This document shows, piece after piece, positions 2,658 to 62,216 of a stretch of DNA of 64,000 nucleotides (its first letter is position 1; every line of letters begins with the position of its first letter). Under the pieces are notes generated by a model. It made no database searches and was not told the origin of the DNA. It worked only from the letters and a program-made list of their open reading frames with translations. The stretch is taken from IMG/VR virus record IMGVR_UViG_3300042302_000394, positions 124,001 through 188,000 of that record. One strand, 5' to 3'. A program made the position numbers and the translations under genes.

Positions 2658-3188
2658 TTATCTAGGACGGATCTTCATTTTACTGTAGATATTTTGGACA
2701 CCTACTGCTTGTCGGATAGCATCTTGCAGAGCATCGTGTTTCCCACCTTTGGGCATGTCCGGATCAAATCCTAGATCAAACAGAGTGCGAGTGTCGCGTA
2801 ACTGCCAATAATTCCACGGCAACGGCTTACCAAGTTGGCGATAGATGTTTTCGATAATTACTAAGTCAAAGGTAGCACCGTGTGACCAAAATGCATCACA
2901 TCCCCAAGCAAACTTGTGAAACTGGTCCATTGCATCCGCAAGTGGAATTCGATTGTCTGGACTAAAGGCTTCTTCCATAATAACCGGATCTTGTTTACTC
3001 CACCAATCTAGTGTGTTTGGGTCAATTTCTCTACCCAATTTATCTTGGTCGTCGAGGTCAACACGGAAATAAATCTTCTCTCCATATCCGTTGCCCCAGG
3101 GATTAAAGTGTACAGCGCCTAAACTAAGGACAACTGCGTTTGGGGAGACAGCCATAGTCTCCATATCAATCATTAAGTGTTTTGCCAT
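2658..3188 (-). CDS. 3'-5' exoribonuclease (DEDDh, Rv2179c/RNase AS-like)
   Basis: HLMIDMETM, WSHGATFDLVII, RDTRT, HDALQDA motifs; start moved to ATG 3188. Confidence 0.8.
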   Translation of the reverse strand: MAKHLMIDMETMAVSPNAVVLSLGAVHFNPWGNGYGEKIYFRVDLDDQDKLGREIDPNTLDWWSKQDPVIMEEAFSPDNRIPLADAMDQFHKFAWGCDAFWSHGATFDLVIIENIYRQLGKPLPWNYWQLRDTRTLFDLGFDPDMPKGGKHDALQDAIRQAVGVQNIYSKMKIRPR

Positions 3189-3194
3189 ACTGTA

Positions 3195-3223
3195 AGTATA
3201 ACACACTTAATGATCTTTGTCAA
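3195..3223 (-). promoter_or_regulatory. sigma70-type promoter TTGACA-17-TATACT
   Basis: -10 ends 6 nt before ATG 3188, so the transcript is probably leaderless. Confidence 0.65.
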
Positions 3224-3453
3224 TACATTTTTTTAGGTAGTTCGTTATCGCGTAGTTTCTTTTGCCAACGAGATTTAGCTGCGCCTTTTTTTCGCTTTCT
3301 TTCGGTAGTTGGTTTTTCGTAAAACATTTTAGATCGGAGTGTTTCTAGTACTCCACTATCTTCTACCTTTTGTTTGAATTTTCTTAATGCCACATTTAAT
3401 GGCAAGTCGCCAACGATAACTTTATTACCGACTGCTTTATTTTGTTTGCTCAT
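3220..3453 (-). CDS. rpsU: 30S ribosomal protein bS21
   Basis: ALRKFKQKV...GVLETLRSKMFYEKPTTERKRKK signature; start overlaps clpX end. Confidence 0.9.
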   Translation of the reverse strand: MSKQNKAVGNKVIVGDLPLNVALRKFKQKVEDSGVLETLRSKMFYEKPTTERKRKKGAAKSRWQKKLRDNELPKKMY

Positions 3454-5048: not shown

Positions 5049-6322
5049 TATCTTCTCGCTCTGATATCTAATAAAAGATGTTCTGGAATATCTGCCATTG
5101 TAATTTCTTTGTTTCTAAGTTTTGTCAACCACTCGTTAAGTGTTGCTTCCTGTCTGCTAATTTCTGTATATTCTTCCTGACTAATAGCTTTAGCTGTTTT
5201 AGTCCATAGGCCACTATTTGACTGTTCTTCGTTTTGAACAAATAGCGGTTCTTCTAGAACCTGTAATTCTGTTTCGGGCGCAACTGCTGAGCGATCATTC
5301 ATTCTTTCTAGTTCGGGCTTATACACCATAGGTGCTAGATCTTTGAAATGTACAAACGGCTCTAACAGATAAGGATGGTGTGCTAAAATAGATGTGACAG
5401 TGGTTGCCGTGGAGACTACGTCATCAATCGGACCTGTTGGGCTGTCACCCTCCGTAGTCTCTTGTTGTTCTGTAACAGTAGGCGGCTCTGGGTCTACGAC
5501 CTCGGTGGTCCCTCCGGGGCTGTTACCCTCCACTAATTCCTTTTTACGGTCACGGAAATTCTGGAAACTGATCTGACTAGCTAACAATAAGATAACTGCC
5601 AACGGATCAAATACCACAATAAGAACAATAATTACCCATGTAACTGCTTTTTCCAAAATTGTAGGATCTGTTTCACCGTAGACAAACTGTGCAATATATT
5701 TTATCGGACCAACTTCTGCTTCAACCTTGCGTACTTCGGCTGCAATTGGCGCACGTTCTTCGCTAATAGAGGTAATAGTTTTCTGTTCGGCTTGGATCTC
5801 AGATTGAAGGCGGGCACGCTCTTTTTGTTGTGCGCGGCGTATAGCAACTGCCTTGTCGGCACCCGTTTCCGAACTGCTTCTTGCCATGACTTGGTCCACA
5901 GCCTCATCCATCTGTTTAAGCGCCTTACGGTTTGCATCTATATTTTCCTTTGCGGTTTTTATCTTTTCATCGTAGACTGCAATCTTACTCTGCACGTCAC
6001 CCGACACTAAACTTTGGTCACTGTGAGCCTGGCTGAGGAATCCAAAAATTCCCATCGAAGTAACGCCCATGAGAACAGCAATGGCAGTCAGCAGGTATGT
6101 TCTAACTAACCAGTGTGCAATTTTCCAATTTTGTTTGAGCCAAAGAGTAGCAGCAATCTTACCAATGCCCAATACAATGCCCATAATGATTACGGGAATT
6201 TGGGCGGCGGCAAAGATTGCAGTAAAGCCGATGATACTGTAGAATTCGGCGACTAGGCTGATAGCGAGACCGCTAAACAGTGCAAGATAGGCTATTAGTT
6301 TTTCATTTAATGTTACAGGCAT
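5048..6322 (-). CDS. membrane-anchored coiled-coil protein
   Basis: N-terminal hydrophobic helices, long coiled coil, further TM segment, acidic tail; TAAATA box 6 nt upstream. Confidence 0.75.
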   Translation of the reverse strand: MPVTLNEKLIAYLALFSGLAISLVAEFYSIIGFTAIFAAAQIPVIIMGIVLGIGKIAATLWLKQNWKIAHWLVRTYLLTAIAVLMGVTSMGIFGFLSQAHSDQSLVSGDVQSKIAVYDEKIKTAKENIDANRKALKQMDEAVDQVMARSSSETGADKAVAIRRAQQKERARLQSEIQAEQKTITSISEERAPIAAEVRKVEAEVGPIKYIAQFVYGETDPTILEKAVTWVIIVLIVVFDPLAVILLLASQISFQNFRDRKKELVEGNSPGGTTEVVDPEPPTVTEQQETTEGDSPTGPIDDVVSTATTVTSILAHHPYLLEPFVHFKDLAPMVYKPELERMNDRSAVAPETELQVLEEPLFVQNEEQSNSGLWTKTAKAISQEEYTEISRQEATLNEWLTKLRNKEITMADIPEHLLLDIRARR

Positions 6323-6331
6323 AGATGATAT

Positions 6332-6724
6332 TTATCGACGCATGTTGGCAATGGCCACAGCTTCCTCATCGCTAAAAATAGGCACAGCATTGCTCTTATG
6401 CATAGTACCGATACCTTTAATTTTAGTGCCTGTATAGACCTTAGCTGGTGCCAGTGCGGCAACGCCTGCTCCGGAATTTAAACTTTTGATGTGATGAGTA
6501 TTTGTCCTACCAACAGGTGTCGGTAATGAATATGACAATGTCTCTGCACTCATTGCTCGTTTACGCTTTTTGTCCTCTGCCTCTACTCCCCATTTCTTTT
6601 GGAGGGTGTTCCATTGCTCATCGAGCTCACGTGCCTTACGTGCTTCTTCAGCATTACGGAATTTGACTTTGCCCTTCTTCTTGCCGTTAAGACTAAGGCT
6701 AGGGTGATGCAGATGCATTGACAT
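6332..6724 (-). CDS. conserved phage hypothetical protein
   Basis: C-terminal YTGTKIKGIGTMHKSNAVPIFS motif recalled from T4-like phage hypotheticals. Confidence 0.7.
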   Translation of the reverse strand: MSMHLHHPSLSLNGKKKGKVKFRNAEEARKARELDEQWNTLQKKWGVEAEDKKRKRAMSAETLSYSLPTPVGRTNTHHIKSLNSGAGVAALAPAKVYTGTKIKGIGTMHKSNAVPIFSDEEAVAIANMRR

Positions 6725-13903: not shown

Positions 13904-16234
13904 TTATAATTTACAGGCTTCGCAATCATCATCGTACAATACTACATTATCTGCGGCATTGATTGCAATGGGGATAGATATGTTAGTGTTTGTTACATCT
14001 GCCTTTGCACCCATTTTATTAATTAAACTGTAATAGATTGTCTTAATGCCCCATTTGTAGGCTAACATTAAATTTTTAGCAATTAATGTACCCGGCACTT
14101 TTCCTCCAGCAAAATGTGCCGGGTTGTAGAATGTATTAGTGCTCAGGCTTTGATCAATGTAGGCAGCAAGCACAGCACTGGTCTTCAAATAGTCAACACA
14201 GTCCTTCTGATCCCACATCAACTGATAACGATTCTTTAGACGTTTGTACTCTGGCACGACTTGTACAAACGATCCAGCTTTCGATTCCTTTACAGAAATC
14301 AATTCCATCGGCATTTCAATTCCGTTGGTAGAGTTTAACACAACTGAACTGGACTCTACTGGTGCCACGGCCATTAAGGTAGCATTACGAATACCGTACT
14401 TGATCATTCTTTCACGTAATGGTTCCCAATCCATACTAGGAGTAAAGTCAGTTAATTCGTTAACTCCAGGTTTACGACGCTCCCAGGGAAACACTCCCTT
14501 ACCATAGTAAGTGTACTGACTACGTCCGCATGGGCCACGTTCTTGGGCAAGCTCGACACTCATTTCGGTTAGGTAGTATGCTTGGTGTTCCGTCCAACGC
14601 TTAACTTCAGCTAATGCTTCATCGGTCCCGTATTTGAAACTTTTACGTGCATGCCAGTAAGCAAGATTAGTAATGCCAACTCCAAGTGGTTCGAAGTCTT
14701 GATTAGCGAGTTTACTTTGTACACTTAAAAAATCTTGATATTGTAGTAAATTACTTAAACTTCGGACCAGCACACGACAGGCTTTTCTCATCTCTTGTGG
14801 GTTACGGAACGCTCCCCAGTTGATGCTGCCAAGAGTGCAAAGAGCAATTCGTCCCTCTGGATCTTCAATTCTCTGGAAAGGGCGGGTGGGTAAAAGTATC
14901 TCCTGGCATAAGTTTGATTGATATATTGGATCCAAGGTTGTATCAAATGGACCCTGGTTAATAACGTTGTCGATATTGACAAGATATATACGCCCCGTAT
15001 CAGTTCGCTCTTTAAGGATTCCATTTTTGAATATCTCATCCGCTGATACAACTTTCTTTTTCTTTGTCTTATCTTGTTCATATTGTAGATACAACTTTTC
15101 AAATTCTGCTGAGTCTCTGTAGTAGGCTTCGTATAGATCCGGAACTTCTGCTGGATCAAACAAACTCATTGTTTCGCCACGCTTATACCGATTCCAGAAC
15201 ATAGCATTAACAACAACACTATAGTCCATTTGGCGTACCCGCACTTCCTCGGTACCTTGGTTGTTCTTTAGAACAATAAGGTCCTCAAACTGATAATGCC
15301 AGATGGGAAAAGTTACTGTACAGCTAGCATTACGAATACCGCCTTGACTGCAACTGCGAAGGTCTGCAAACCATTTCTTTAAGAATGGTATCATACCCGT
15401 ATGCTTGATCTCACCGTTGCGAATAGGGGCCCCTAAGGGGCGGATTCTGCCAATTTCGAGACCAATTCCGGCTCGTTTTGAAGCATATTTGGCCATCATT
15501 TCGCCTGCGGCAAAGATCGAATCAAGAGTATCATCACTACTAATAAGTACGCAACTACTGAATTGTTTAGTTGTGGTGCCAAGGCCAGCAAGGACAGGGG
15601 TAGCTAAAGTAAAGTGGCCATCACTTGCACACTCATAATATTCCTTTACTAATTTTAGTCTTTTATCCTTAGATTCATTGTGAAAAGCTGTTGCGGCGGC
15701 AATAGCATAACGAACCTGAGGAGTTTCATAGATTATACCTGTAGCACGATTTTGTACTAGATACTTTTCAGCCAATTGTGCCACGGCTGCATAGGTATAG
15801 TTTTCATCTTTGCTATGATCAATGAATAGGTCAATAATATCCCATTCTTCTTGTGTATACCATTCTAGCAGATCACTAGTATACATACCTAGCTCTACAT
15901 TCTTTTTAACAATGCTGTATAGTTTAGGAGGATCATACTCTCCGTATACTTCTTTACGTAACATACTGACTTTTTGCCTGCCAGCTACCTGTTGATAGTT
16001 TACATTATTAATTTCTGGATTTTCTGTTTCGTCGATCAAGTCGACCATTGCTTTTAACAGTAGTTCGTCGATGGTTTTAGTGGTCATTCCGTCGTGTAGT
16101 TCAATCTGTGCCTTGATCTCAATCATGGATGGACTTACTCCATCTATACCTCTACACGAATATGCTACCTGTCTTTGTATCTTTGCTATGTCTAAGGGGA
16201 CACGATTCCCATTACGTTTAACCACTGTAATCAT
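13904..16234 (-). CDS. nrdA: ribonucleotide reductase class Ia alpha subunit
   Basis: N-terminal ATP cone, FSSCVLI, QSNLCQEI, C-terminal CEAC; uninterrupted. Confidence 0.96.
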   Translation of the reverse strand: MITVVKRNGNRVPLDIAKIQRQVAYSCRGIDGVSPSMIEIKAQIELHDGMTTKTIDELLLKAMVDLIDETENPEINNVNYQQVAGRQKVSMLRKEVYGEYDPPKLYSIVKKNVELGMYTSDLLEWYTQEEWDIIDLFIDHSKDENYTYAAVAQLAEKYLVQNRATGIIYETPQVRYAIAAATAFHNESKDKRLKLVKEYYECASDGHFTLATPVLAGLGTTTKQFSSCVLISSDDTLDSIFAAGEMMAKYASKRAGIGLEIGRIRPLGAPIRNGEIKHTGMIPFLKKWFADLRSCSQGGIRNASCTVTFPIWHYQFEDLIVLKNNQGTEEVRVRQMDYSVVVNAMFWNRYKRGETMSLFDPAEVPDLYEAYYRDSAEFEKLYLQYEQDKTKKKKVVSADEIFKNGILKERTDTGRIYLVNIDNVINQGPFDTTLDPIYQSNLCQEILLPTRPFQRIEDPEGRIALCTLGSINWGAFRNPQEMRKACRVLVRSLSNLLQYQDFLSVQSKLANQDFEPLGVGITNLAYWHARKSFKYGTDEALAEVKRWTEHQAYYLTEMSVELAQERGPCGRSQYTYYGKGVFPWERRKPGVNELTDFTPSMDWEPLRERMIKYGIRNATLMAVAPVESSSVVLNSTNGIEMPMELISVKESKAGSFVQVVPEYKRLKNRYQLMWDQKDCVDYLKTSAVLAAYIDQSLSTNTFYNPAHFAGGKVPGTLIAKNLMLAYKWGIKTIYYSLINKMGAKADVTNTNISIPIAINAADNVVLYDDDCEACKL

Positions 16235-16269
16235 GAGGTACTTCCTTTATTTTTCTTCTAAGCTGGTAT

Positions 16270-16704
16270 TTACCTGGGGGCAGTAACTTCAACTAGATTT
16301 TCTATCTTAAATGACCCGTTGACTTTATCAACTGGTACAGGTCCGTTGTCGTCATAATTGACAACCCACTTATCATCAATATAAACTAAATTATACTCTC
16401 TCGTTTGGTTGTTGTCTACTAAAGTGCGGACTTCAATGTTACTATCCTTAAATTTTTTTGTCAATTTAAGCGTCCAGCTAATCATTAGTGCTTTGGTAAA
16501 ATCGTCGTAGACGTTTTCTACAATAATTTCCCAAGGACTGGGCCAGCTTTGTTGATAGTAAGGATCAATTGATCTATTATATGGTATGAAGGGGGCATGG
16601 TGCCAAAAATCCCAAACTACCTGTAAGGGATTCTCAACCTCGTCTAATTTCCTTCTATGATTTGTCCACTCTGTTAATCTGTCATCTACAGGTTGGTTAA
16701 ACAT
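16270..16704 (-). CDS. hypothetical protein
   Basis: 144-aa ORF directly downstream of the tailspike-like gene. Confidence 0.7.
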   Translation of the reverse strand: MFNQPVDDRLTEWTNHRRKLDEVENPLQVVWDFWHHAPFIPYNRSIDPYYQQSWPSPWEIIVENVYDDFTKALMISWTLKLTKKFKDSNIEVRTLVDNNQTREYNLVYIDDKWVVNYDDNGPVPVDKVNGSFKIENLVEVTAPR

Positions 16705-18673: not shown

Positions 18674-19399
18674 TTACTGAGTGAGCATTTGCTTTAAGCC
18701 CTGCATGCCTTTAGTGTAGTATTCTTCTACTTTTCCTAACCACATGTCTTCGTACTTGTTAAAGTTGTCTTTGTTTAGATCAAACTGCTGATACTGTAAA
18801 TCGCGGCTGCACATAAAAATAACACCCCTACGAATGTTAGTTCCGTAGACTTCATTATGTGCTAATATATAGGCAACTAACTGTACATAATAGTCCTCGA
18901 CCCACTCTGCTTTTTTAGGCTTGTTAGTCTGCTTATGATCGCATACTGCTGGCTCATCCTCGAATACTCCAACTAGGTCAGTAGTACCACTGTATAGTCC
19001 CGGGAAATACAGGCTCTGTTCCATGGCCCATACTTCGTTCATTTTACTCAGTCCGTTTTCAATGATGATATCAGCCATTTTATTAGCCTGCACATGCACT
19101 GGGTTATTACCGGGCTGTCGCTGTTCACCAATTAGGAATCGTTCTAAATTGGCGTGCATGGCTGTACCTACGCCTGCTGCCTCTGTGGTGATCTGTTGCG
19201 CTTTCTCAGCACCTACTCGTTTACGCCATTCAATCAAGTGCGTCTGATCTTTGGTGGCACTGAGGATAGTAGTTACGCTGGGTAGCTTTTCACCGTCAGG
19301 TGTTTGATAAACTCGTTTCCGTGTTACGGGATCATTTATCTGCTGACAATTTTTGTATTGGAATCGTTCAATGAACGGGGGAGGAGTATAAACTTGCAT
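18674..19399 (-). CDS. PD-(D/E)XK exonuclease
   Basis: PSVTTIL, GTAMH, MEQSLY, SGTTDLVG, DHKQTNKPK, QLVAY. Confidence 0.85.
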   Translation of the reverse strand: MQVYTPPPFIERFQYKNCQQINDPVTRKRVYQTPDGEKLPSVTTILSATKDQTHLIEWRKRVGAEKAQQITTEAAGVGTAMHANLERFLIGEQRQPGNNPVHVQANKMADIIIENGLSKMNEVWAMEQSLYFPGLYSGTTDLVGVFEDEPAVCDHKQTNKPKKAEWVEDYYVQLVAYILAHNEVYGTNIRRGVIFMCSRDLQYQQFDLNKDNFNKYEDMWLGKVEEYYTKGMQGLKQMLTQ

Positions 19400-19406
19400 T
19401 ACTATA

Positions 19407-19435
19407 ATTATAGCATCGCAAGTTTATAAGGTCAA
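19407..19435 (-). promoter_or_regulatory. sigma70-type promoter TTGACC-17-TATAAT
   Basis: -10 ends 7 nt before ATG 19399. Confidence 0.7.
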
Positions 19436-22960: not shown

Positions 22961-22992
22961 AAAGTACCTATTTAATTACAGATATTTATGTC

Positions 22993-25416: not shown

Positions 25417-25424
25417 AGCAGTAT

Positions 25425-28793: not shown

Positions 28794-28800
28794 GCTATTA

Positions 28801-28828
28801 ATTATACAGTATATCTTAGTAGGGTCAA
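28801..28828 (-). promoter_or_regulatory. sigma70-type promoter TTGACC-16-TATAAT
   Basis: -10 ends 7 nt before the GT start codon. Confidence 0.6.
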
Positions 28829-34714: not shown

Positions 34715-34731
34715 ATCTTTTCCTTTAATAT

Positions 34732-47029: not shown

Positions 47030-47052
47030 AGTATTATATTTACCCTATTTTA

Positions 47053-48744
47053 TTATGCTCTCACTGTCAAGTCTAATATGTCAAAATATCCTAATCCAGT
47101 ATCGTAACAAATGAATATAGCAGCATTGACATCATCATAGTAATAGTCACCGGGTTTAAGATCGCTTAGGCTTAATCCGTTTGCAGCATCTGCATTGGTA
47201 TACATTCTAGGTGCAGCTGACAGTTGTCCCGAGCCATCTGGAAATACTAGGGTGTAACCCGATTGTATAGTAATAGAACCGATACCGTCTGAAACAAGAC
47301 CTTCTACGGCACTACCTGTATAGCCAATGTCCCCTTGACTACCTGTATAACCATCACGTCCTATTACACCGTCAACACCTGCACTACCTGTGAATCCAAT
47401 ACTACCTGTATAACCTAGATCACCGGCGCTGCCTACATCACCTTTTTCTCCTTGCGAACCTACATAACCTACGTTGCCTCTCGAACCTACATAGCCCACA
47501 TCGCCTTGTGAACCTACATAGCCCACATCGCCTTTTTCTCCCTGCGAACCTACATAACCTACGTTGCCTCTCGAACCTACATAGCCCACATCGCCTTGTG
47601 AACCAGTATATCCATCTATGCCTTGGCTACCAGTAAAACCAATACTTCCAGTATACCCTAACTCTCCCTGCGGTCCTACAATATTTCCAACATCTAACCA
47701 ATCATCACCGACCCAAATGTTTAAGTGGCCATTATCAGATGTAATGTATCCATCACCGATATTTCCTAGATAGGACCCGGGGAGAGTTGCGTAGGTAGAA
47801 GTACTACCTAAAATCTGTACACTAGTACCGTCAGTACCTCGACTACCCACATAGCCCACATTTCCCTGACTACCTGTAAATCCTAATTCTCCTTGTGAAC
47901 CCGAGTATCCAATGCTTCCAGTAAAACCTAGATCACCTTGACTACCTGTAAATCCTAATTCACCTTGTGATCCGGTAAAACCTTGTGATCCAGTATATCC
48001 ACGACTTCCAGTAAATCCTATATCGCCTTGACTACCAGTAAATCCAGTATCACCAACTGATCCATCAACACCGGCACTTCCAGTAAATCCTATATCGCCT
48101 TGACTACCAGTAAATCCAGTATCACCAACTGATCCATCAACACCGGCACTTCCAGTAAATCCAGTATTGCCTTGACTACCAGTAAATCCAGTATCACCAA
48201 CTGATCCATCAACACCGGCACTTCCAGTAAATCCAGTATTGCCTTGACTACCAGTAAATCCAGTATCACCAACTGATCCAGTATAACCTACATTCCCTTG
48301 ACTACCTGTAAAACCTTGACTGCCTGTGTAGCCCGTATATCCGAGATTTCCCTGAGATCCAGTGTACCCGGTATCTCCACGCGAGCCTGTATAGCCAATA
48401 TTACCCTGCGAACCTGTATAGCCTGTAGGGCCTTGTATTTTTCCTACATCAACCCAAACTGTCCCGTCCCATACCCATAAATTTCCAGTGGCTTCTTCAA
48501 TAAATCCATCACCGGAATCGCCTGCGTAACTAGTTTCCAATTGAGTACTATTAGATACGCTGCCTGTAATAGTAACGCCACTACCCGAACCATTAAATTG
48601 CAGTAATCTGCCGCCAGGGGTAACGCCGTCACCTATGCGTAGGTCCCCTAATGTCTCATCATACCAAATTGTGCCCTTGTCCCCTACCCAGTCGTAAGAA
48701 TTGACAGTTATTATTCTACCGGCTTGTATTTTATAGATTGGCAT
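47053..48744 (-). CDS. collagen-like fibre protein
   Basis: GFT/GYT-GSQ collagen tract. Confidence 0.8.
48005..48279. repeat. 72-bp tandem repeat (about 3.8 copies) within collagen gene
   Basis: Unit starts at 48005, 48077, 48149, 48221; encodes [19 protein letters not shown](N/D)(T/I)GFT. Confidence 0.85.
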
Positions 48745-48765
48745 AACGATATTTATCGTATGCTG

Positions 48766-49056
48766 TTATCTTGACATTAATGCTTTTAGTTGTTGAATAA
48801 TGTCGTTCTGCTCAGGGGGCTCTTCGCCCACTGTTTCCTGACCTGTTAGTTTGTCTATAACAGGGCTGTCTTTGCCTGCTGCGGCTTTAGCAAGTTCTAG
48901 TTCTTGCTGCTGTGGGCTGATCATCACAGGATTTTGCTGCAATTCTGTATCGGCTTCCTCGGGTGGGTTTTGACCAGCAGCATTAACCACAGGATCTTCA
49001 TCACCATTAATTGTAATGGTAATAGGTACATTAATGGTGAATTCTTTTGCTCTCAT
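48766..49056 (-). CDS. small acidic protein (MRAKEFTI N-terminus)
   Basis: TAAATA 4 nt upstream; CTS-like start. Confidence 0.7.
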   Translation of the reverse strand: MRAKEFTINVPITITINGDEDPVVNAAGQNPPEEADTELQQNPVMISPQQQELELAKAAAGKDSPVIDKLTGQETVGEEPPEQNDIIQQLKALMSR

Positions 49057-49066
49057 GATGTATTTA

Positions 49067-49194: not shown

Positions 49195-49635
49195 TTAGTT
49201 ACACCAACTTTGTTTAGCATCGCCGTAATATTCGCGTGCTAGACCGTTGGCAATTAATCCTTGACGAATGCTCTGTCCATTGACTAAGATGTCTCCTAGA
49301 ATGCGACCGCCAAACTTGTCCCAACCGTAGATGATAACTTGATGTTTAGGGTGGGATTGAATCGCATGTGTGGTAAATTTGCTGGCCACTAATGCTCTCT
49401 CGTTTTCTTGCGGGCACTGTGCTCTGTGTCCTTTTTCCGGAGTATCAACACCAAATATACGAACTGCTAGTTCTGGCTTTAGTGGAGCAGGAAGGAATGG
49501 TGCTGCAATCACAATAGTGTCACCGTCGCTTACACGTATAATCTGTGCGTCATAAGTTGCACCTTTAGGTGTCTTTTGTGCTAGAGCAGGAACTGCCGCC
49601 ACTGCTAATAATAGGGTTAATAATAGTTTTTTCAT
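49195..49635 (-). CDS. thermonuclease (SNase-like) with signal peptide
   Basis: DGDT, VRIFGVDTPE, DKFGGRILG; MKKLLLTLLLAVAAVPALA; start moved to 49635. Confidence 0.88.
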   Translation of the reverse strand: MKKLLLTLLLAVAAVPALAQKTPKGATYDAQIIRVSDGDTIVIAAPFLPAPLKPELAVRIFGVDTPEKGHRAQCPQENERALVASKFTTHAIQSHPKHQVIIYGWDKFGGRILGDILVNGQSIRQGLIANGLAREYYGDAKQSWCN

Positions 49636-49642
49636 AATGTAT

Positions 49643-51355
49643 TTAAGTAATTTCTTGCCAGCCAATTTGTGCCAGCACGTCTGCGTTGTTTGATGTTGCT
49701 GCCATAGTTAGTGTCACAATATCGCTGACTCCTGCCAATGTTCTGCCTAACTGAAACGCAAACGCATCTGCTCCTAGTTCCGATAGTTCTCTACTGCTGA
49801 CATAACCAGTTTGTAGTTCTATACCGCCCGAAACTCCTGTGGCGGCCGTGTCATATTCAACAGTTCCTGAAGTACTGGTTCCTGCCCAAGTAGCACCAGT
49901 TAGGGTAGGGTTTAGCACCAATCTCCAACGATAGTAATTCACTGTGGGACTCAGCACATCCACTTGTCTGGGCAACACAATAGCATCTAATCTTGTGCTG
50001 GCCAATCTAATGCTGACCAACGGATAGTATGTTCCGGCATTGACCAATCTCAACACACTGGTGCCACGTCCTGCTGATTCGCTGTAGGTAAATGCGTTGT
50101 AGCCACCTTCGCTGATTACAGTGGAGCATATCTGTCTCATCATACTGGATGAAGCAGTGGCTCCAGTATTGGTTATTTCATAACGCACTGGCAGTACAGC
50201 CGTGGTCATATAAGTGGTGGTATTATTCACAACATTGGCATGATGGAATGTGTGGCAAAGCACATAAGCACCGTTGACAACAAATCCACAGCGAACACTT
50301 CCCACGCCCAACCACTCAATGTCTGTCCAAAATATCTGTGTCCTGTCTACATTTAATGCGGCGAATGGATTGTCCCAAGCGTCTTGTCTTATCCTATCTT
50401 CAACCAACGCACCTGTACTATAACTTCTTATTACCAAATAGTTATATGCGCCATCATTTTCAAAATAGACTCCGTTGTTGGTGGTAAAATATCCCACACG
50501 CTGACGCAGGTTGGCCTTGGGAGTGTTCATGGCAAAAGTGGCCAACACCAGCAGACTCTTGCCTGGCTGATAAGGAAAAACTCTTTTGGTTTCTCGTATG
50601 ACACTGGATCCATTACTTGTGCTCACTGCCAGTCTAAATGTAGAACTGTCTGTTTCGTAGACCACTGTGCCGCCAGTGCTGGTGCTACTGCTAAAATCAT
50701 TGTGGTCGTAATATCTTGCTCTACTGTCAAACAGTGTATAAGGCTCACTGACTCGCAGTCTACCAAACGCATCAGTAGATCCTGTGCCCAATGTAAATGT
50801 GTTAGTGCCAGTTAGTGTGGCAGTTACCGTACCACTGACGGGTATAGGATTACCTGAATCGTTTTTAATCTCTACTTCCGGAAGGCTTGAGATAGCAACT
50901 GTGCCAGTTATAGTCCACGGTATTGTACCTTGGTATACTGTGGAGGTGGTTGGAAAGTTAGTTACAGCAAAACTGGTGTTGCTGATTGTCAGTGTATTGC
51001 TTACAAATACAGTTGAAGTAAAATTACTTACTGTGACTGTTCCTGTGATAGCAGGTAGAGAAGAAATATTTACAGTTGATGTAAAATTGCTGACTACAAC
51101 TTGTCCGTTGGTTCCTATGCTAACTGTCCAGGTGCCTTCTTGACGAACACTAATGCTTTCTAATGCAGCCAGTGTTGATGTACTTAAACTTACAGTGTCA
51201 ACAATAACATCACCTTCAAGATTGATACCATCAACATGTACACGAGCCACGGGTTGCCCCTGGCTGTTGTACTGCATAGTCTTATGAATATTTAGAAGAT
51301 TGCTCTCCTGTGGATGTTCATAGGCTGTGCTGTTCTGATAGCGATCAACCGCCAT
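49643..51355 (-). CDS. putative virion structural protein
   Basis: 570 aa, Thr/Ser-rich; DAFGRLRVSEP motif. Confidence 0.7.
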   Translation of the reverse strand: MAVDRYQNSTAYEHPQESNLLNIHKTMQYNSQGQPVARVHVDGINLEGDVIVDTVSLSTSTLAALESISVRQEGTWTVSIGTNGQVVVSNFTSTVNISSLPAITGTVTVSNFTSTVFVSNTLTISNTSFAVTNFPTTSTVYQGTIPWTITGTVAISSLPEVEIKNDSGNPIPVSGTVTATLTGTNTFTLGTGSTDAFGRLRVSEPYTLFDSRARYYDHNDFSSSTSTGGTVVYETDSSTFRLAVSTSNGSSVIRETKRVFPYQPGKSLLVLATFAMNTPKANLRQRVGYFTTNNGVYFENDGAYNYLVIRSYSTGALVEDRIRQDAWDNPFAALNVDRTQIFWTDIEWLGVGSVRCGFVVNGAYVLCHTFHHANVVNNTTTYMTTAVLPVRYEITNTGATASSSMMRQICSTVISEGGYNAFTYSESAGRGTSVLRLVNAGTYYPLVSIRLASTRLDAIVLPRQVDVLSPTVNYYRWRLVLNPTLTGATWAGTSTSGTVEYDTAATGVSGGIELQTGYVSSRELSELGADAFAFQLGRTLAGVSDIVTLTMAATSNNADVLAQIGWQEIT

Positions 51356-51650: not shown

Positions 51651-51953
51651 TTATTCCTTGGTTTGAAAGTTTGGATACATGCTTACGCTGTCTGATCTAA
51701 TGTCACTAGGGTTTTTAGGACCGTTTAGTCCGCCTAGCCCTGCGGCTGTGGTCACGCTGTCAATGCCTTGTACATGCACGTCTGGACTGTTGTCATACAT
51801 GCCAGCAGATTTAACTTCTACAGGTTCTGCTGATAATTGTGCAAACAGTTGTGCAAAGGCACCACCGATCGGATCTTGCTGTGTAGATTGTTGGGCGCAC
51901 TCAACTTGATCAATAAGATCCAGTACGCCACGAATAATTTCAGTTGCTCTCAT
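51651..51953 (-). CDS. small protein (MRATEII N-terminus)
   Basis: TAAATA 6 nt upstream; CTS-like start. Confidence 0.7.
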   Translation of the reverse strand: MRATEIIRGVLDLIDQVECAQQSTQQDPIGGAFAQLFAQLSAEPVEVKSAGMYDNSPDVHVQGIDSVTTAAGLGGLNGPKNPSDIRSDSVSMYPNFQTKE

Positions 51954-51983
51954 AATGTGTATTTACTCGTAAGTTAACACTGA

Positions 51984-54685: not shown

Positions 54686-54973
54686 TTATAATCCTGCTAG
54701 TTTTCTAATTGACTCTAACTGATCCGGTTTCTCTAGAATCTTGTCATAATCTTGCATAGTGAGTACACCCTTGTTCTTAATAGCCAAAATGTTAGTGATA
54801 ACAAAGTGCAGGTCTGCATCCGATTTTACGTCCTCGCGGGCTAGTTCTAAAATTCGAGTAAGTAATGGAATATCCAATGTTACTGTATCAACAGCATCTG
54901 CGGACTCCTTTACTGTAATATTTGGTTTGGCAGGGTTTACAATGCCGGAATGTATAAAAGTTGAGTGACTCAT
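54686..54973 (-). CDS. hypothetical protein
   Basis: 95 aa; TAAATA 5 nt upstream. Confidence 0.7.
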
Positions 54974-54985
54974 ATGACTATTTAG

Positions 54986-55602: not shown

Positions 55603-55821
55603 TTATTTTGAACGATATACTATACGACATTTAGTTAAGTCGTATGGGCTCATTTCTACCCTAACTCTATCCCCTAACAGTATTTGAATTCTGTTCTGTC
55701 GCATCTTGCCCGAGATGAATCCCAGAACTGCGGAACCTTGTTCCAACCTTACCCGAAACATTGCGTTGGGTAGTACTTCTTCGATCCTGCCCTCAAGGCT
55801 GATCATATCTTCTTTAGCCAC
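55603..55821 (-). CDS. infA: translation initiation factor IF-1
   Basis: [22 protein letters not shown]...[28 protein letters not shown]. Confidence 0.95.
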
Positions 55822-57438: not shown

Positions 57439-57762
57439 TTAAATGGAGAAGCTACTGCCGCAGCCGCAAGTGGATTGAGCGTTTGGATTTTTTATTGAAA
57501 AGCTAGATCCGGAAAGATCTTCTTTGTAATCAATTTCGGCACCTTGTAGATACTGCATACTCATAGCATCTACTACGACTTTAAATTCACCAATTGGAAA
57601 TTGGAAATCATCTTCGTTAAATTCTTCATCAAAGGTAAATCCGTAACTAAATCCAGAACAGCCGCCACCTTGTACAAAGGTTCTTAAGGCAAGTTTTGGA
57701 TTATTTTCCTCCATTAGGAGGTCTGTAATCTTTGTCTTAGCATTTGATGTTATGTTGATCAT
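57439..57762 (-). CDS. A-type Fe-S carrier (ErpA/IscA family)
   Basis: [17 protein letters not shown]; start moved to ATG 57762, 5 nt after TAAATA. Confidence 0.9.
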
Positions 57763-57767
57763 ACTAC

Positions 57768-57784
57768 TATTTACACTATAAATA
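57768..57784. promoter_or_regulatory. back-to-back late-type boxes TAAATA (-) and TATAAATA (+)
   Basis: 57768-57773 on minus strand, 57777-57784 on plus strand. Confidence 0.6.
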
Positions 57785-57802
57785 TCCAAGCAGGAGAAAA
57801 AC

Positions 57803-58320: not shown

Positions 58321-58572
58321 TCATTTACTGTCGTAGTCTTTAACAGGGCCGCCGTGTAATTCACTCTTAGACTTTTTGCCTTTGAGTCTTACACCGCTGC
58401 CTGCCTTGCCCTGTGTACCCGTACCGTCAGTATGATTGCTATCATGTTTAAGCATGCCGCGGCTCACGCATTGTGAATAGCGCACATTACTCAATCTAGA
58501 ACGCCCAATAGAGCATTGGCTAGCAGTAGGTGCGGCTATTTTCTTTTCGGCAAGTAGTTCTGTGATTCGCAT
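58321..58572 (-). CDS. small basic protein (MRITELLAE N-terminus)
   Basis: TAAATA 5 nt upstream; CTS-like start. Confidence 0.7.
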   Translation of the reverse strand: MRITELLAEKKIAAPTASQCSIGRSRLSNVRYSQCVSRGMLKHDSNHTDGTGTQGKAGSGVRLKGKKSKSELHGGPVKDYDSK

Positions 58573-58580
58573 AGATTTAT

Positions 58581-58901
58581 TTATTTGAATAGGATCAAAC
58601 TCATAATTACTGTCTGTGCCGCAAAGCCCAAACAGATAGTAGCAATGTACAAGAAGTTACGTTCAATAAGAGCTTTAAAAAACAGCGTGATCAATGCACT
58701 CCAAACAAATACCATTAAATCTACAGGAGGCAGCTTATCGCTCTGCGCCATCAATACTGCTACAAGAGTAGGAATACTAGACAGATGCAGTAGGATAATT
58801 GTAACCCAACCTAATGTATGGGCACTTACATGCCCAAGGTGATCTTTAGCAAATTTAACAAGAAATAATACTGCGTCTTTAATTTGATCAATGATAAACA
58901 T
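58581..58901 (-). CDS. small multi-pass membrane protein
   Basis: Three to four hydrophobic segments. Confidence 0.7.
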   Translation of the reverse strand: MFIIDQIKDAVLFLVKFAKDHLGHVSAHTLGWVTIILLHLSSIPTLVAVLMAQSDKLPPVDLMVFVWSALITLFFKALIERNFLYIATICLGFAAQTVIMSLILFK

Positions 58902-59491: not shown

Positions 59492-59590
59492 ATAGACCTC
59501 CTTTTTCGTTAGTGGTAAAATAATTATACAACAATGACTATTATACAGTCAAAGTTGGTAAAAAGCAACCGGTTTTGGTAAAATCTAGGA

Positions 59591-60142
59591 TTACTTAATG
59601 CCAATAAGCATAAATCTTGAGAACTTCCAAGTGGGGTACTCAAAGTCTTTTTGGCCGCGGTACAGTAGGTTACTAACTGGATAAGTCCCGATGAACTCGT
59701 CTAAACTACTGCTGTGTATGTGGTGGTCTTCGTGCGGCATATTGTTGCCTTGAAGTACTACAGTGGTTCCTTTTGGGATACTGTTCCACCAATCCAAACT
59801 TTCGAAGTGTTCGGTGCTTGTATTTATAACCAAATCTGGGCCGTGCCAGTCCAGATCAAGTAGATTACAGTCCTGGGTTTTAGCTTTAAACTTCCAGTTA
59901 TCTATAACCCAATTCTCGTTGATCATGTCCGCCACAGCTTCGCATTTTGGATCAACGTCGTAACTGCGTATCTTTCCAATCTGTATATTGCCTCGACTGT
60001 TTAATAGGAACGCTGTTACTCCATACCATCCGCCGTAGATCCAAATACTATCGACAGAATCAAAAAGTTTTTCTAATTCTTCGCAGAGCCAAATCTTACT
60101 TCCTATTTGACCGCTACTAAATGCATCCTTATTCACTATCAT
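59591..60142 (-). CDS. class I SAM-dependent methyltransferase-like protein
   Basis: IYGGWYG, SYDVDP, INTSTEH. Confidence 0.55.
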   Translation of the reverse strand: MIVNKDAFSSGQIGSKIWLCEELEKLFDSVDSIWIYGGWYGVTAFLLNSRGNIQIGKIRSYDVDPKCEAVADMINENWVIDNWKFKAKTQDCNLLDLDWHGPDLVINTSTEHFESLDWWNSIPKGTTVVLQGNNMPHEDHHIHSSSLDEFIGTYPVSNLLYRGQKDFEYPTWKFSRFMLIGIK

Positions 60143-60251
60143 ACTTTAATTTCAATATTTTTTTCAAGACTAGGAACCCTAAATATAGCATCTATTTACT
60201 GAGAGATCAAATGTTGTTAATATAACAGTATTTTATTTAATAAATACCGCT

Positions 60252-62216
60252 ATGCCTGATAGATCTATACAATTACTAACTGATGTTTTTCCAAATTCAA
60301 CTACAAATCATGGTAATTTGAACAATCCCGATATAATACTAGTCCAGGCACCTGGATGGGGAGTGCAAACAGCTCCGCTTTCTTTAGCATCACTTTCAGC
60401 CTATGTTCGGCAGAAAGGATACAAGATTTTACCATTAGATTTAAATGTTGAATTTTTTGCTATTAGACCTGAGAAATTTTCCATAATGTGGGACATAGAT
60501 CAATCTCAGTGGTTTTGGGAATCTAAAGACTGCGTTAATGACCTGTTAACCGAATACAAAAAAGAAATTGATGACTTTGTCGAGTTAGTGGTGTCGACTA
60601 ATACACCATTAGTTGGATTTAGTTTATACAACACTTCAATGCATACTTCGATGCATCTTATCAAACTGCTCAAAGCACGTAAGCCTGAGCTAAAGATTAT
60701 TGTCGGTGGTCCTCATGCCCACCGATATCTAGCTGGTAATGTTTTGGCAAAAAATCCGTTAATAGATGCAGTCGCCCAGGCTGAGGGAGAAGAAACATTA
60801 GTAGACATAATTGAGCGTGTTCGAAAAAATCAATCATTGCTCGATTGCCCTGGATTGTTAGTGTTTAAAGACGGAGCAGTACATGCTACTCCAACAAGGC
60901 CAATGATTCCAAAAATCGACACTCTTCCGATACCCCACTACAGTGATTTTTCATTAGCTCCTTACCTATCCCCAACACGATTACCAATGGCGTCTAGTCG
61001 AGGGTGTCCTAATAAATGTATATTCTGTAATGAGCAACCTTATTGGGAATCATATCGATTTCGGTCTGCAGAAAGCATGATTGAAGAAGTTAAGTACCAA
61101 TTAAAATTATATCCTGAAATTGACTTTATTGACTTTCAAGATAGTTTATGTAACGGGAAGATAAGCGCAATTGAAAAGTTTGCCGAATACCTCATTGAAA
61201 ATAAAATTAAAATACAATGGGCCGGACAGGCAGTTATTAGAAAAGAAATGACCGAAGAACTGATGATAAAATTAAAACAGTCCGGATGTGTGGTCATGGC
61301 CTACGGATTAGAAACTCCAAACCCTACACTTATGAGGAGTGTAGGAAAGTTATTATCAAAAGGTGCCGATATTGATAAAATTGCTGAATCTCATGCAAGG
61401 ACCGGACTTAATGCAGTTTACAATGTCATGTTTGGGTTACCGGGAGAAACTGAAGAAGATTCATTAATGGTCTTAGAGTTTTTAAGACGTAATTCAAAAA
61501 ATAAATTATATGTAAATCCCAGTGCAGCATTTTGCGGATTTGCTAACGGAACTCCTGGATGGGAGAACGCAGAAAAATTCGGTATTGACAAAACACTCGG
61601 CGGAACTTTTTGGAAAAGTGTAGATGGTAATAACACATTCCTAGTTCGATTAAAAAGATTTGAAGATTTTTGTCGATTAGTTTCCGACTTAGGTATAAAA
61701 ACCACTTATCCGTCGACATATCTTCTCAATAGAAATCAAGTCATTGCCCAATATTATATTGCAATAGGTCAACCAGAAAAAGCAATATACTATTACACAG
61801 AATGGGTTAAAGATCATCCCGAAGATCAAATAGCTAAAAAGTTTTTATTCGAATATTCAGGTTTCTTAAAAAGTACCCCAAGTTCAAATGTTTATGCAAT
61901 TAGCCGGCATTCGGATGAGAATTGGTTAAATGGTGTTGCTAGAAATTGGGGGCCTGCAATATTATTTTCACATGTTCCTTACATTTTAGAAGAATTAACA
62001 GTTGGTAAAATTGTACAGTTTTCAGATCTTCAAACAAGAAAAATAATTAGAGTTGAAGATAATTTTGAAAATGATTGTATTGTAATACACCTCGACGGCA
62101 CTCATTTAGATGGAGATCAAGTTGGTTGGCCAAAACTAATAACTGTTTTAGAGGAGCCTAGCAAAGTTATCCCTATTAAGATAGTTAATTACACAGAAAT
62201 AGATTTTAAAAAATGA
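60252..62216 (+). CDS. cobalamin-binding radical SAM enzyme
   Basis: VGFSLY..IIVGGPHA B12-binding domain; SRGCPNKCIFC CxxxCxxC; YGLET; TPR-like C-terminal segment. Confidence 0.88.
   Translation: MPDRSIQLLTDVFPNSTTNHGNLNNPDIILVQAPGWGVQTAPLSLASLSAYVRQKGYKILPLDLNVEFFAIRPEKFSIMWDIDQSQWFWESKDCVNDLLTEYKKEIDDFVELVVSTNTPLVGFSLYNTSMHTSMHLIKLLKARKPELKIIVGGPHAHRYLAGNVLAKNPLIDAVAQAEGEETLVDIIERVRKNQSLLDCPGLLVFKDGAVHATPTRPMIPKIDTLPIPHYSDFSLAPYLSPTRLPMASSRGCPNKCIFCNEQPYWESYRFRSAESMIEEVKYQLKLYPEIDFIDFQDSLCNGKISAIEKFAEYLIENKIKIQWAGQAVIRKEMTEELMIKLKQSGCVVMAYGLETPNPTLMRSVGKLLSKGADIDKIAESHARTGLNAVYNVMFGLPGETEEDSLMVLEFLRRNSKNKLYVNPSAAFCGFANGTPGWENAEKFGIDKTLGGTFWKSVDGNNTFLVRLKRFEDFCRLVSDLGIKTTYPSTYLLNRNQVIAQYYIAIGQPEKAIYYYTEWVKDHPEDQIAKKFLFEYSGFLKSTPSSNVYAISRHSDENWLNGVARNWGPAILFSHVPYILEELTVGKIVQFSDLQTRKIIRVEDNFENDCIVIHLDGTHLDGDQVGWPKLITVLEEPSKVIPIKIVNYTEIDFKK

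What the first reader, a model, noticed from the sequence alone, without database searches (positions are those of the whole stretch)
3188..60254. Widespread leaderless gene starts: TAAATA box 4-7 nt before the start codon
Seen: TAAATA sits 4-7 nt before starts at 6322 (6), 25416 (5), 47029 (7), 48744 (5), 49056 (4), 49635 (4), 51953 (6), 54973 (5), 57762 (5), 58572 (5) and 60252 (5), leaving no room for an SD. Three sigma70-type -10 boxes end 6-7 nt before ATG (3188, 19399, 28793). Established: the T4 late box TATAAATA spans about -13 to -6, so a 5-nt gap puts the A of AUG at +1. Inference: this phage relies heavily on leaderless late mRNAs, which could explain why it carries initiation-related genes (IF-1, bS21).
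Basis: partly seen in the sequence, partly recalled or inferred. Interest (0 to 1): 0.62.

Follow-up and report, generated by a model that had tools for sequence, protein, structure and literature searches.

The report
Promoters fused to start codons (leaderless)
In this large uncultivated lake phage and its relatives, many late (T4-type TAAATA) and early (sigma-70) promoters sit exactly where transcription should begin on the A of the ATG, so about one gene in six is predicted to be made from an mRNA with no ribosome-binding leader; T4 and a T4-like cyanophage show none of this.

Summary
One further site (22960) was missed.

- **Excess:** 24 motif-independent starts in the 208-kb contig carry TAAATA 3-8 nt upstream, against 2.7 +/- 1.6 in shuffles.
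- **Two spacing classes:** the TAAATA-to-ATG distance peaks at 5 nt (no SD), with a second mode at 13-33 nt (with SD). Near-consensus TTGACA-N17-TATAAT promoters peak at 6 nt, with a second mode at 20-31 nt. The 1-nt offset matches the known positions of the T4 late box (-13..-6) and the sigma-70 -10 box (-12..-7), so +1 falls on the A of ATG in both.
- **Replication:** two complete relatives (349 and 355 kb) with no DNA similarity show the same pattern and encode a gp55-type late sigma. Our contig is about 58% complete and lacks that block.
- **Controls:** T4 and a cyanophage have no such short gaps.
- **Other support:** 77 of 78 candidates start with ATG, a pyrimidine is usual at -1, predicted 5' structure is weak, TAAATA is depleted inside genes, and the box is conserved before orthologues.
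- **Limits:** no RNA data exist, so transcription start sites are inferred. The proposed link to IF-1 and bS21 is untested, and the published bS21 data point the other way.

This is a new variant of known kinds.

The parts
6320..6334 (-). Late box TAAATA (6329-6334), 6-nt spacer and ATG at 6322. Gene 5048-6322, a 424-aa protein of unknown function. The TAA of the box is the stop codon of upstream gene 6332-6724.
   Evidence: The box is kept 4-8 nt before ATG in about 45 of 56 distinct homologous IMG/VR loci.
22958..22974 (-). Late box (22969-22974), 8 nt, ATG at 22960. Gene 22535-22960, 141 aa. A second box lies 22 nt upstream of the ATG, and a hairpin followed by a T-run lies just before it.
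25414..25427 (-). Late box (25422-25427), 5 nt, ATG at 25416. Gene 25012-25416, 134 aa, with an N-terminus of the MRAxEF type. The TAA of the box is the stop codon of the 1122-aa upstream gene.
47027..47042 (-). Late box (47037-47042), 7 nt, GTG at 47029. Gene 42407-47029, a 1540-aa tail fibre. This is the weakest case because the start codon is not AUG.
48742..48755 (-). Late box (48750-48755), 5 nt, ATG at 48744. Gene 47053-48744, a 563-aa collagen-like tail fibre.
49054..49066 (-). Late box (49061-49066), 4 nt, ATG at 49056. Gene 48766-49056, 96 aa, with an MRAKEF N-terminus. The G002 orthologue is also late-leaderless.
49633..49645 (-). Late box (49640-49645), 4 nt, ATG at 49635. Gene 49195-49635, a 146-aa SNase-like nuclease. 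The TAA of the box is the stop codon of the 570-aa virion protein gene.
51951..51965 (-). Late box (51960-51965), 6 nt, ATG at 51953. Gene 51651-51953, 100 aa, with an MRATEI N-terminus.
54971..54984 (-). Late box (54979-54984), 5 nt, ATG at 54973. Gene 54686-54973, 95 aa. It heads a divergent unit: the opposite strand carries a box for gene 55050-55562.
57760..57773 (-). Late box (57768-57773), 5 nt, ATG at 57762. Gene 57439-57762, a 107-aa IscA-like Fe-S protein. This start matches the family's length better than the longer ORF start at 57816.
58570..58583 (-). Late box (58578-58583), 5 nt, ATG at 58572. Gene 58321-58572, 83 aa. The TAA of the box is the stop codon of the upstream gene.
60241..60254 (+). 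Late box (60241-60246), 5 nt, ATG at 60252. Gene 60252-62216, a 654-aa B12-binding radical-SAM enzyme.
3186..3223 (-). Sigma-70 promoter TTGACA-N17-TATACT (3195-3223), 6 nt, ATG at 3188. Gene 2658-3188, a 176-aa exonuclease-like protein. The -35 hexamer overlaps the bS21 stop codon.
19397..19435 (-). Sigma-70 promoter TTGACC-N17-TATAAT (19407-19435), 7 nt, ATG at 19399. Gene 18674-19399, a 241-aa exonuclease. The G002 orthologue (85% identical) also has a fused sigma-70 promoter.
28791..28828 (-). Sigma-70 promoter TTGACC-N16-TATAAT (28801-28828), 7 nt, ATG at 28793. Gene 25425-28793, a 1122-aa glycosyl- and methyltransferase-like protein.
34712..34734 (-). Comparator: a leadered late box (34729-34734) followed by a 14-nt leader with AAGGAAAAG, then ATG at 34714.
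16232..16272 (-). Comparator: a leadered late box (16267-16272) with a 32-nt leader carrying AAGGAAG, then ATG at 16234. The gene is the ribonucleotide reductase large subunit.
2582..2640 (-). Comparator: a perfect sigma-70 promoter TTGACA-N17-TATAAT (2612-2640) with a 27-nt leader carrying AAGGA, then ATG at 2584.
3220..3453 (-). Phage bS21 gene (Pfam Ribosomal_S21, E = 1.3e-14). The likely start is the ATG at 3453. It is not preceded by a box.
55603..55821 (-). Phage IF-1 gene (Pfam eIF-1a, E = 1.3e-25). It has a GTG start with an AGGAG SD upstream and a terminator-like hairpin downstream (55566-55587).

Best explanation
TAAATA is the core of a -35-less late promoter read by host RNA polymerase carrying a phage gp55-type sigma. 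In this phage clade about two thirds of the late boxes that can be assigned to a gene start lie 4-8 nt (mode 5) before an ATG. Transcription would then begin on, or 1-3 nt before, the A of the start codon. The resulting mRNA has no Shine-Dalgarno leader and would be translated by the leaderless route, in which a 70S ribosome binds a 5'-terminal AUG.

The same design is used with ordinary host sigma-70 promoters for a subset of early genes, where the -10 box ends 5-7 nt (mode 6) before ATG. The remaining promoters of both classes drive conventional leaders of about 15-30 nt with an AGGAG SD.

Shown directly: the spacing, its statistics, its conservation, and the presence of the late sigma in complete relatives. 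Inferred: the transcription start position and translation of the leaderless transcripts.
For: 1. Both promoter classes are bimodal. TAAATA-to-ATG peaks at 5 nt, with a second SD-containing mode at 13-33 nt. The sigma-70 -10-to-ATG distance peaks at 6 nt (10 of 15 short-gap sites), with a second mode at 20-31 nt.
2. The 1-nt offset between the two short modes equals the known offset between the T4 late box (ends at -6, PMC1524935) and the -10 hexamer (ends at -7; this position is from general knowledge).
3. The pattern recurs in three genomes with no DNA similarity. G000 has 34 short-gap late boxes, G001 has 32 and G002 has 34. The sigma-70 6-nt mode has 10, 11 and 6 sites respectively. It also recurs in 1.16 Mb of other clade loci.
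4. In T4 and cyanophage S-RIM12, ATAAATA-to-ATG is unimodal at 12-32 nt, with no site under 12 nt.
5. Promoter-like behaviour: 43% of TAAATA copies lie in the 12% of the contig that is intergenic, against 8-24% for permuted hexamers. The motif is depleted in genes on both strands. There is no -35 enrichment. Short-gap and leadered boxes share flank preferences that the other 290 copies lack.
6. A late sigma (phrog_12791, E = 3.6e-84; T4 gp55, E about 1e-7) is present in both relatives that are at least 97% complete, in gp55-gp47-gp46 order. At least 595 IMG/VR contigs carry it.
7. Boxes precede tail fibres and virion proteins here, and the gp13, gp17 and gp25 homologues in G002.
8. Leaderless hallmarks: 77 of 78 candidates start with ATG, against 285 of 316 SD-led genes. 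The -1 base is a pyrimidine in 75-92% of candidates in the three classes of adequate size (3 of 5 in G002's five sigma-70 sites), against 44-48% of SD-led genes. Mean MFE of +1..+40 is -1.64 against -3.24 kcal/mol, p = 8e-10.
9. Orthologues keep the fused box (7 of 12 late, 3 of 8 sigma-70), with N-termini aligned from residue 1. The 424-aa family keeps it in about 45 of 56 loci while the flanks diverge.
10. Divergent gene pairs 26 nt and 66 nt apart carry a box for each gene, which leaves no room for any leader.
Against: - No RNA 5'-end data exist for this phage or its clade: the 24 runs that hold it are all DNA.
- gp55 is not on this contig. Its presence is inferred from synteny of the missing block.
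- The co-activator gp33 and the clamp gp45 were not detected by sequence in a complete relative.
- About a quarter of the boxes overlap the upstream gene's stop codon, so read-through transcripts with termination-reinitiation could also express those genes.
- Gaps of 4 or 7-8 nt need some flexibility in start-site choice.
- One site (47029) uses GTG, which works poorly on leaderless mRNA in E. coli.
- The host is unknown, so its capacity for leaderless translation is unknown.
Confidence: 0.72

Rival explanations
1. The boxes are genuine late promoters, but the proteins are made mainly from longer polycistronic read-through transcripts. Translation would then occur by coupling, reinitiation or 70S scanning, so the leaderless transcripts are minor or untranslated by-products of a compact genome.
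For: In about 9 of 36 sites the TAA of the box is the upstream gene's stop codon. Most of these genes lie in long same-strand blocks. Some orthologues use an SD instead.
Against: This does not explain the sharp 5-nt and 6-nt modes, the near-absolute use of ATG, the pyrimidine at -1 or the weak 5' structure. Boxes also head divergent units with 26-66-nt intergenic gaps, where no same-strand upstream gene exists. Fused sigma-70 promoters show the same geometry without any stop-codon overlap.
Confidence: 0.12
2. TAAATA at 4-8 nt is a translation signal, not a promoter. It would be an A/U-rich, SD-replacing ribosome-binding element, perhaps read by ribosomes carrying the phage bS21.
For: The box occupies the position an SD would occupy. 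The phage encodes bS21, which contacts the anti-SD region (PMC9723584, PMC10491246). Two clade genomes carry bS21 and IF-1, while T4 and S-RIM12 carry neither.
Against: The same box, with the same flank preferences, lies upstream of ordinary SDs in 37 leadered cases. It is the late-promoter core in T4 relatives (PMC1524935). It is depleted on the antisense strand of genes, which a translation signal would not require. The sigma-70 class shows the same short spacing with unmistakable -35 and -10 elements. The pyrimidine at -1 fits a start-site rule.
Confidence: 0.08
3. The pattern is a chance result or an annotation artefact caused by AT-rich upstream regions and mis-called starts.
For: Upstream regions are AT-rich, and the starts were called by a home-made ORF caller.
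Against: The observed count is 24 against 2.7 +/- 1.6 in dinucleotide shuffles using motif-independent starts. Permuted hexamers show no comparable peak. The pattern is replicated in three genomes and absent in two controls. Start codons are confirmed by N-terminal alignment of orthologues.
Confidence: 0.02

Closest known systems
T4-type late promoters (TATAAATA at -13..-6, read by the gp55 sigma with gp33 and the gp45 clamp)
   Same: The core is TAAATA and there is no -35 element. The boxes precede virion genes. A gp55 homologue sits in gp55-gp47-gp46 synteny in complete relatives. The first T of the box is variable, as in RB49, KVP40, S-PM2 and Aeh1 (CTAAATA).
   Different: Here most boxes abut the start codon, whereas T4 and cyanophage S-RIM12 have none closer than 12 nt. 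The two bases upstream of the core are purine-rich rather than TA. gp33 and gp45 were not detectable by sequence. The sigma is 302 aa against 185 aa in T4.
Leaderless phage mRNAs from host sigma-70 promoters (lambda cI from PRM is the classic case)
   Same: The -10 box ends 5-7 nt before an AUG, so +1 falls on the A of the start codon. AUG is required.
   Different: This involves dozens of genes per genome, not one regulatory gene. It is combined with a second, phage-sigma promoter class built the same way.
Organisms and phages with many leaderless transcripts (mycobacteria, PMC4633059; Caulobacter, cited in PMC9031893; Thermus phages, from my own knowledge)
   Same: A sizeable fraction of genes (about 10-18% here) lacks a 5' UTR.
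   Different: The fraction here is predicted from promoter geometry only. The phage otherwise uses strong AGGAG SDs, and the host is unknown. The jumbo phages with mapped start sites, phiKZ and AR9, have no leaderless transcripts (PMC8244752, PMC5312081).
bS21-encoding freshwater huge phages (Chen et al. 2022, PMC9723584)
   Same: They are large lake phages that carry bS21, with a proposed role in translation takeover.
   Different: Those phages are predicted to infect Bacteroidota, which ignore SDs, whereas this clade uses canonical sigma-70 promoters and AGGAG SDs. That paper does not mention promoters or leaderless mRNAs.

Membership tests
T4-type gp55-dependent late promoter | Conserved (T)ATAAATA-like box about one helical turn upstream of the start site | tested here: met
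   The TAAATA core was used as the search term. Its non-random placement is shown by 43% of copies being intergenic and by a sharp spacing to gene starts. The upstream two bases are R-rich rather than TA.
T4-type gp55-dependent late promoter | No -35 element | tested here: met
   The best TTGACA-like match upstream of 100 short-gap boxes is no better than at random positions: 25% against 24% with two or fewer mismatches.
T4-type gp55-dependent late promoter | A gp55-type late sigma encoded by the phage | tested here: inconclusive
   It is absent from this contig by tblastn, phmmer, Pfam Sigma70_r2 and phrog_12791, but the contig is only 58% complete. It is present in both relatives that are at least 97% complete. 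The missing part of our phage maps to the G002 block that holds it.
T4-type gp55-dependent late promoter | Boxes lie upstream of late (virion) genes | tested here: met
   Boxes precede tail fibres and virion proteins in the window and the gp13, gp17, gp18 and gp25 homologues in G002. They also precede some enzymes: a radical-SAM enzyme, an IscA-like protein and an SNase-like nuclease.
T4-type gp55-dependent late promoter | Co-activator gp33 and sliding clamp gp45 | tested here: inconclusive
   Neither was detected in G002 by phmmer or Pfam DNA_PPF. The gp44 clamp loader is present in both G000 and G002. Both proteins are small and diverge quickly, so non-detection is weak evidence.
T4-type gp55-dependent late promoter | Transcription starts about 6 nt downstream of the box, late in infection | not testable with these tools
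   No RNA run holds this phage.
Leaderless mRNA | The primary 5' end lies at or within a few nt of the start codon | not testable with these tools
   This is inferred from promoter geometry only (PMC1524935).
Leaderless mRNA | No SD or other leader-borne ribosome-binding site | tested here: met
   Only 4-8 nt separate the box from the ATG, and none of these spacers carries an SD. SD-led genes form a separate class.
Leaderless mRNA | AUG start codon strongly preferred | tested here: met
   77 of 78 candidates use ATG, against 285 of 316 SD-led genes. The exception is the GTG at 47029.
Leaderless mRNA | Accessible, unstructured 5' end | tested here: met
   Mean MFE of +1..+40 is -1.64 against -3.24 kcal/mol for SD-led genes, Mann-Whitney p = 8e-10.
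Sigma-70 promoter fused to the start codon (lambda PRM-cI type) | -35 and -10 hexamers 16-18 nt apart, with the -10 box ending 5-7 nt before ATG | tested here: met
   There are 15 such sites in G000, three of them in the window, each with at most one mismatch per hexamer. The mode is 6 nt in G000, G001 and G002.

The most novel reading that the evidence does not exclude
The phage-encoded bS21 and IF-1, which are syntenic in at least two clade genomes and absent from T4 and a cyanophage, remodel host ribosomes or initiation so that 5'-terminal-AUG phage mRNAs outcompete SD-led host mRNAs. That would make promoter-to-ATG fusion part of a translational takeover programme.
Probability: 0.12. Interest if true: 0.85.

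Novelty: new variant of a known kind. Interest (0 to 1): 0.56.

Why it matters
- **Clade size.** If confirmed, a very large and abundant clade of uncultivated freshwater huge phages expresses roughly a tenth to a sixth of its genes from leaderless mRNAs in both early and late programmes. At least 595 IMG/VR contigs carry its late sigma. This has not been described for T4 relatives.
- **Annotation.** RBS-based gene callers will mis-place these starts.
- **Host prediction.** The host must translate 5'-terminal AUGs well.
- **RNAP biology.** The fixed 5-nt and 6-nt spacings act as a natural ruler for start-site choice by gp55 holoenzyme compared with sigma-70 holoenzyme.
- **Testable question.** The architecture offers a concrete way to ask why huge phages carry bS21 and IF-1.

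Tried and rejected
- A megablast of 6.3 kb against the phage collection found no match.
- A tblastn of T4 gp55, gp45, gp44, gp62, gp46, gp47, regA and rpbA against the contig found nothing significant. This first suggested a non-T4 phage. It was later explained by the contig lacking the core block.
- Pfam Sigma70_r2 found nothing in G000-G004.
- The search for RNA runs returned 24 holders, all DNA lake metagenomes. Read laying was therefore not used, since contigs of DNA runs cannot show RNA 5' ends.
- Host inference from IF-1 failed: the best cellular relatives are about 64% identical and spread over Proteobacteria, Chloroflexota, Bacteroidota and others.
- gp33 and gp45 were not detected.
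- None of 79 gp55-bearing IMG/VR loci overlaps G000 at the DNA level, so there is no direct physical link.
- The terminator scan did not show terminators systematically ahead of the fused boxes.
- A at +4, proposed to stack on A1493 in lambda cI mRNA, is no more frequent in the candidates than in SD-led genes.
- Reading TAAATA as a host sigma-70 -10 box was rejected. It lacks the -7 T, and the boxes have no -35 partner.

Full report
**What the window is.** The window is bases 124,001-188,000 of a single 207,813-bp IMG/VR contig with 41% GC. CheckV rates the contig 58% complete. It is found in at least 24 lake-water DNA metagenomes and in no RNA run.

In gene orientation every claimed gap is correct. 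The three sigma-70 cases are complete promoters (TTGAC[A/C]-N16/17-TATA[A/C]T) ending 6-7 nt before ATG. One site was missed (22960, gap 8). The start at 47029 is GTG, with no nearby in-frame ATG.

Genome-wide there are 172 TAAATA copies. Thirty-four lie 4-8 nt before an ATG that opens at least 50 codons, with the peak at 5 nt (16 sites). The fourteen permuted hexamers mostly give 0-3 per bin, with higher counts only where a permutation overlaps the box. Using only longest-ORF starts, chosen without reference to the motif, 24 of 257 have the box at 3-8 nt. Dinucleotide-preserving shuffles give 2.66 +/- 1.62, with a maximum of 9 in 500. Only about 9 of 36 boxes use their TAA as the upstream gene's stop codon.

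**Two classes of start, two classes of promoter.** The phage is not SD-less: AGGA or AGGAG peaks 5-8 nt before many starts. With a simple classifier, 126 of 257 genes are SD-led, 32 have a fused late box and 13 have a fused sigma-70 promoter.

The key result is bimodality in both promoter types. Near-consensus TTGACA-N16-18-TATAAT promoters are followed by ATG either after 5-7 nt (15 sites, 10 of them at exactly 6) or after 20-31 nt containing AGGAG. Almost nothing falls in between. TAAATA is followed by ATG either after 4-8 nt or after 13-33 nt containing an SD.

PMC1524935 states that the T4 late box occupies -13 to -6, that its first T is poorly conserved among T4 relatives, and that phage Aeh1 uses CTAAATA. 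TAAATA therefore ends at -6, and a 5-nt gap puts +1 on the A of ATG. A -10 hexamer ends at -7 (general knowledge), so a 6-nt gap does the same. The observed modes of 5 and 6 reproduce this 1-nt offset.

**The box behaves as a promoter, not as a ribosome-binding site.**
- Forty-three percent of TAAATA copies lie in the 12% of the contig that is intergenic, against 8-24% for permuted hexamers.
- The motif is depleted inside genes on both strands: 38 antisense copies, against about 77-169 for permutations.
- There is no -35 partner.
- Short-gap and leadered boxes share flank preferences (purines at the two upstream positions, little G just downstream) that the other 290 copies lack.
- Divergent gene pairs 26 nt and 66 nt apart carry one box per gene.

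**Who reads it.** The contig itself has no sigma or gp55 homologue. The 424-aa protein at 5048-6322 has 517 IMG/VR relatives, including two contigs rated 97% and 100% complete: G001 (349 kb) and G002 (355 kb). Both encode a T4 gp55 homologue. The G002 protein matches phrog_12791, "sigma factor for late transcription", at E = 3.6e-84. It sits in gp55-gp47-gp46 order as in T4. G002 also has homologues of gp44, gp4, gp13, gp17, gp18, gp20, gp21, gp23, gp25 and UvsW.

G000 and G002 share 109 reciprocal best hits with a median identity of 58%. These map to G002's 0-90 kb and 250-350 kb regions and almost never to 100-250 kb, the block that holds gp55 and the core virion genes. The missing 42% of our phage is therefore most likely that block. 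This is an inference: no gp55-bearing locus overlaps G000 at the DNA level. The late sigma is found on at least 595 IMG/VR contigs at 70-90% identity. gp33 and gp45 were not detected.

**Replication and controls.** G002 (40% GC) and G001 (46% GC) have no DNA similarity to G000 or to each other, yet show the same patterns. TAAATA at gap 5 gives 22 and 14 sites, with second modes at 16-25 nt. The sigma-70 gap of 6 gives 6 and 11 sites, with second modes at 20-31 nt. Across the three genomes there are 100 short-gap late boxes. Another 1.16 Mb of clade loci behaves likewise. In T4 and cyanophage S-RIM12, analysed identically, ATAAATA-to-ATG is unimodal at 12-32 nt, with no site below 12 nt. The leaderless spacing is thus a trait of this clade, not of T4 relatives in general.

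**Conservation.**
- In about 45 of 56 distinct homologous loci of the 424-aa gene (50-80% amino-acid identity), (A)TAAATA lies 4-8 nt before the ATG. The upstream sequence, and sometimes the upstream gene, differs. The first codons vary mainly at third positions. One relative has GAGGAGG instead.
- Between G000 and G002, 7 of 12 late-fused and 3 of 8 sigma-70-fused genes keep their class, with alignments starting at residue 1. Others have switched to an SD.

**Hallmarks of leaderless initiation.** The review PMC9031893 states that leaderless translation needs a 5'-terminal AUG in E. coli and Caulobacter.
- 77 of 78 candidates use ATG, against 285 of 316 SD-led genes.
- The -1 base is a pyrimidine in 27 of 32, 12 of 13 and 21 of 28 candidates by class, against 61 of 126 and 84 of 190 SD-led genes. 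G002's five sigma-70 sites give 3 of 5. This fits the pyrimidine(-1)/purine(+1) start-site preference.
- Predicted structure of +1..+40 is much weaker: -1.64 against -3.24 kcal/mol, p = 8e-10.

**Which genes.** In the window the fused late boxes precede two tail-fibre genes, several small proteins, an SNase-like nuclease, an IscA-like protein and a B12 radical-SAM enzyme. The fused sigma-70 promoters precede two exonuclease-like genes and a large glycosyl- and methyltransferase. In G002 the gp13, gp17 and gp25 homologues are fused. The sheath (gp18) has an SD leader behind a late box, and the capsid (gp23) has one behind a variant TAAAATA box. "Relies heavily" is therefore fair for promoters, about two thirds of assignable late boxes (68 fused against 37 leadered). 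It is not fair for the most abundant virion proteins.

**The IF-1 and bS21 idea.**
- Both genes are real and syntenic in G002. T4 and S-RIM12 have neither. That is a single phylogenetic co-occurrence.
- IF-1 has a GTG start with an AGGAG SD, and bS21 follows a ClpX-like gene without a box. Neither is itself leaderless.
- Published data say IF1 and IF2 stimulate leaderless translation non-specifically and IF3 inhibits it (PMC9031893). E. coli ribosomes lacking uS2 and bS21 favour leaderless lambda cI mRNA (PMC10491246).
- The link therefore remains a speculation. I rate it at about 0.12.

**Novelty.** No paper in the searchable library contains both "leaderless" and "TATAAATA". Start-site maps of the jumbo phages phiKZ and AR9 found no leaderless transcripts. 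The bS21-phage paper does not discuss promoters or leaders. Leaderless phage mRNAs and gp55 promoters are each well known, but their systematic fusion in a large clade appears undescribed. This is a new variant of known kinds.

**Limits.** Transcription starts and translation are inferred, not observed. The host is unresolved. Gene calls come from my own ORF caller, though the main statistics do not depend on it.

Noticed in passing
G000 198,400-207,700 (outside the window); similar cassettes at window 2582-2640 and 9580-9629: About 18 small tandem genes are each preceded by a perfect TTGACA-N17-TATAAT promoter. The promoters share a conserved spacer (GGTAAAACC-like) and a conserved leader (ACAYACWTACACA...AGGAGC). 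They look like repeated early promoter-leader cassettes, and a few of them are the fused, leaderless version. In several, a hairpin followed by a T-run spans the -35 element and the spacer (for example window 2625-2650).
   Followed up: partly
window 25012-25416, 48766-49056 and 51651-51953; also G002 57368-57916, 72584-73566, 265181-265546 and 299981-300256: A set of otherwise dissimilar small proteins shares the N-terminus MRA(K/R/T)E(F/I), encoded as ATGAGAGCA.... Most have a fused late box and lie next to tail-fibre genes. [quoted passage not shown]
   Followed up: partly
window 5048-6322 (-): This 424-aa protein has no Pfam or PHROG family but has at least 517 relatives in IMG/VR. It is a useful marker for the clade, and its function is unknown.
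   Followed up: partly
window 3195-3223 and 3220-3222: The bS21 stop codon (TGA) lies inside the -35 hexamer of the next gene's fused sigma-70 promoter. bS21 itself directly follows a ClpX-like ATPase gene (3437-4666).
   Followed up: no
window 55566-55870: The phage IF-1 gene starts with GTG behind an AGGAG SD and is followed by a 9-bp-stem terminator-like hairpin. A TAAATA copy lies about 85 nt upstream, inside the preceding gene.
   Followed up: no
G002 (L100-L117), whole genome: The relative G002 strongly avoids AATT (observed/expected 0.30) and TGCA (0.49), while G000 avoids neither. Both genomes avoid CGCG (about 0.46). This suggests the two phages face different restriction pressures or hosts.
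   Followed up: partly
window 7200-8246, 12791-16234, 56068-57360 and 60252-62216; G000 13782-16073 and 117347-118741: The contig has a rich accessory gene content: PstS-like phosphate-binding protein, class I ribonucleotide reductase, ATP-dependent DNA ligase, several radical-SAM/SPASM enzymes, ClpB-like and ClpX-like ATPases, NAMPT, PhoH, UvdE and glycosyltransferases.
   Followed up: partly
G000 2669-5065 and 30484-32031 (outside the window): Two tail-fibre-like proteins begin with an Mtd_N domain (major tropism determinant N-terminal domain), and many fibres carry collagen repeats. I did not check whether a diversity-generating retroelement is present.
   Followed up: no
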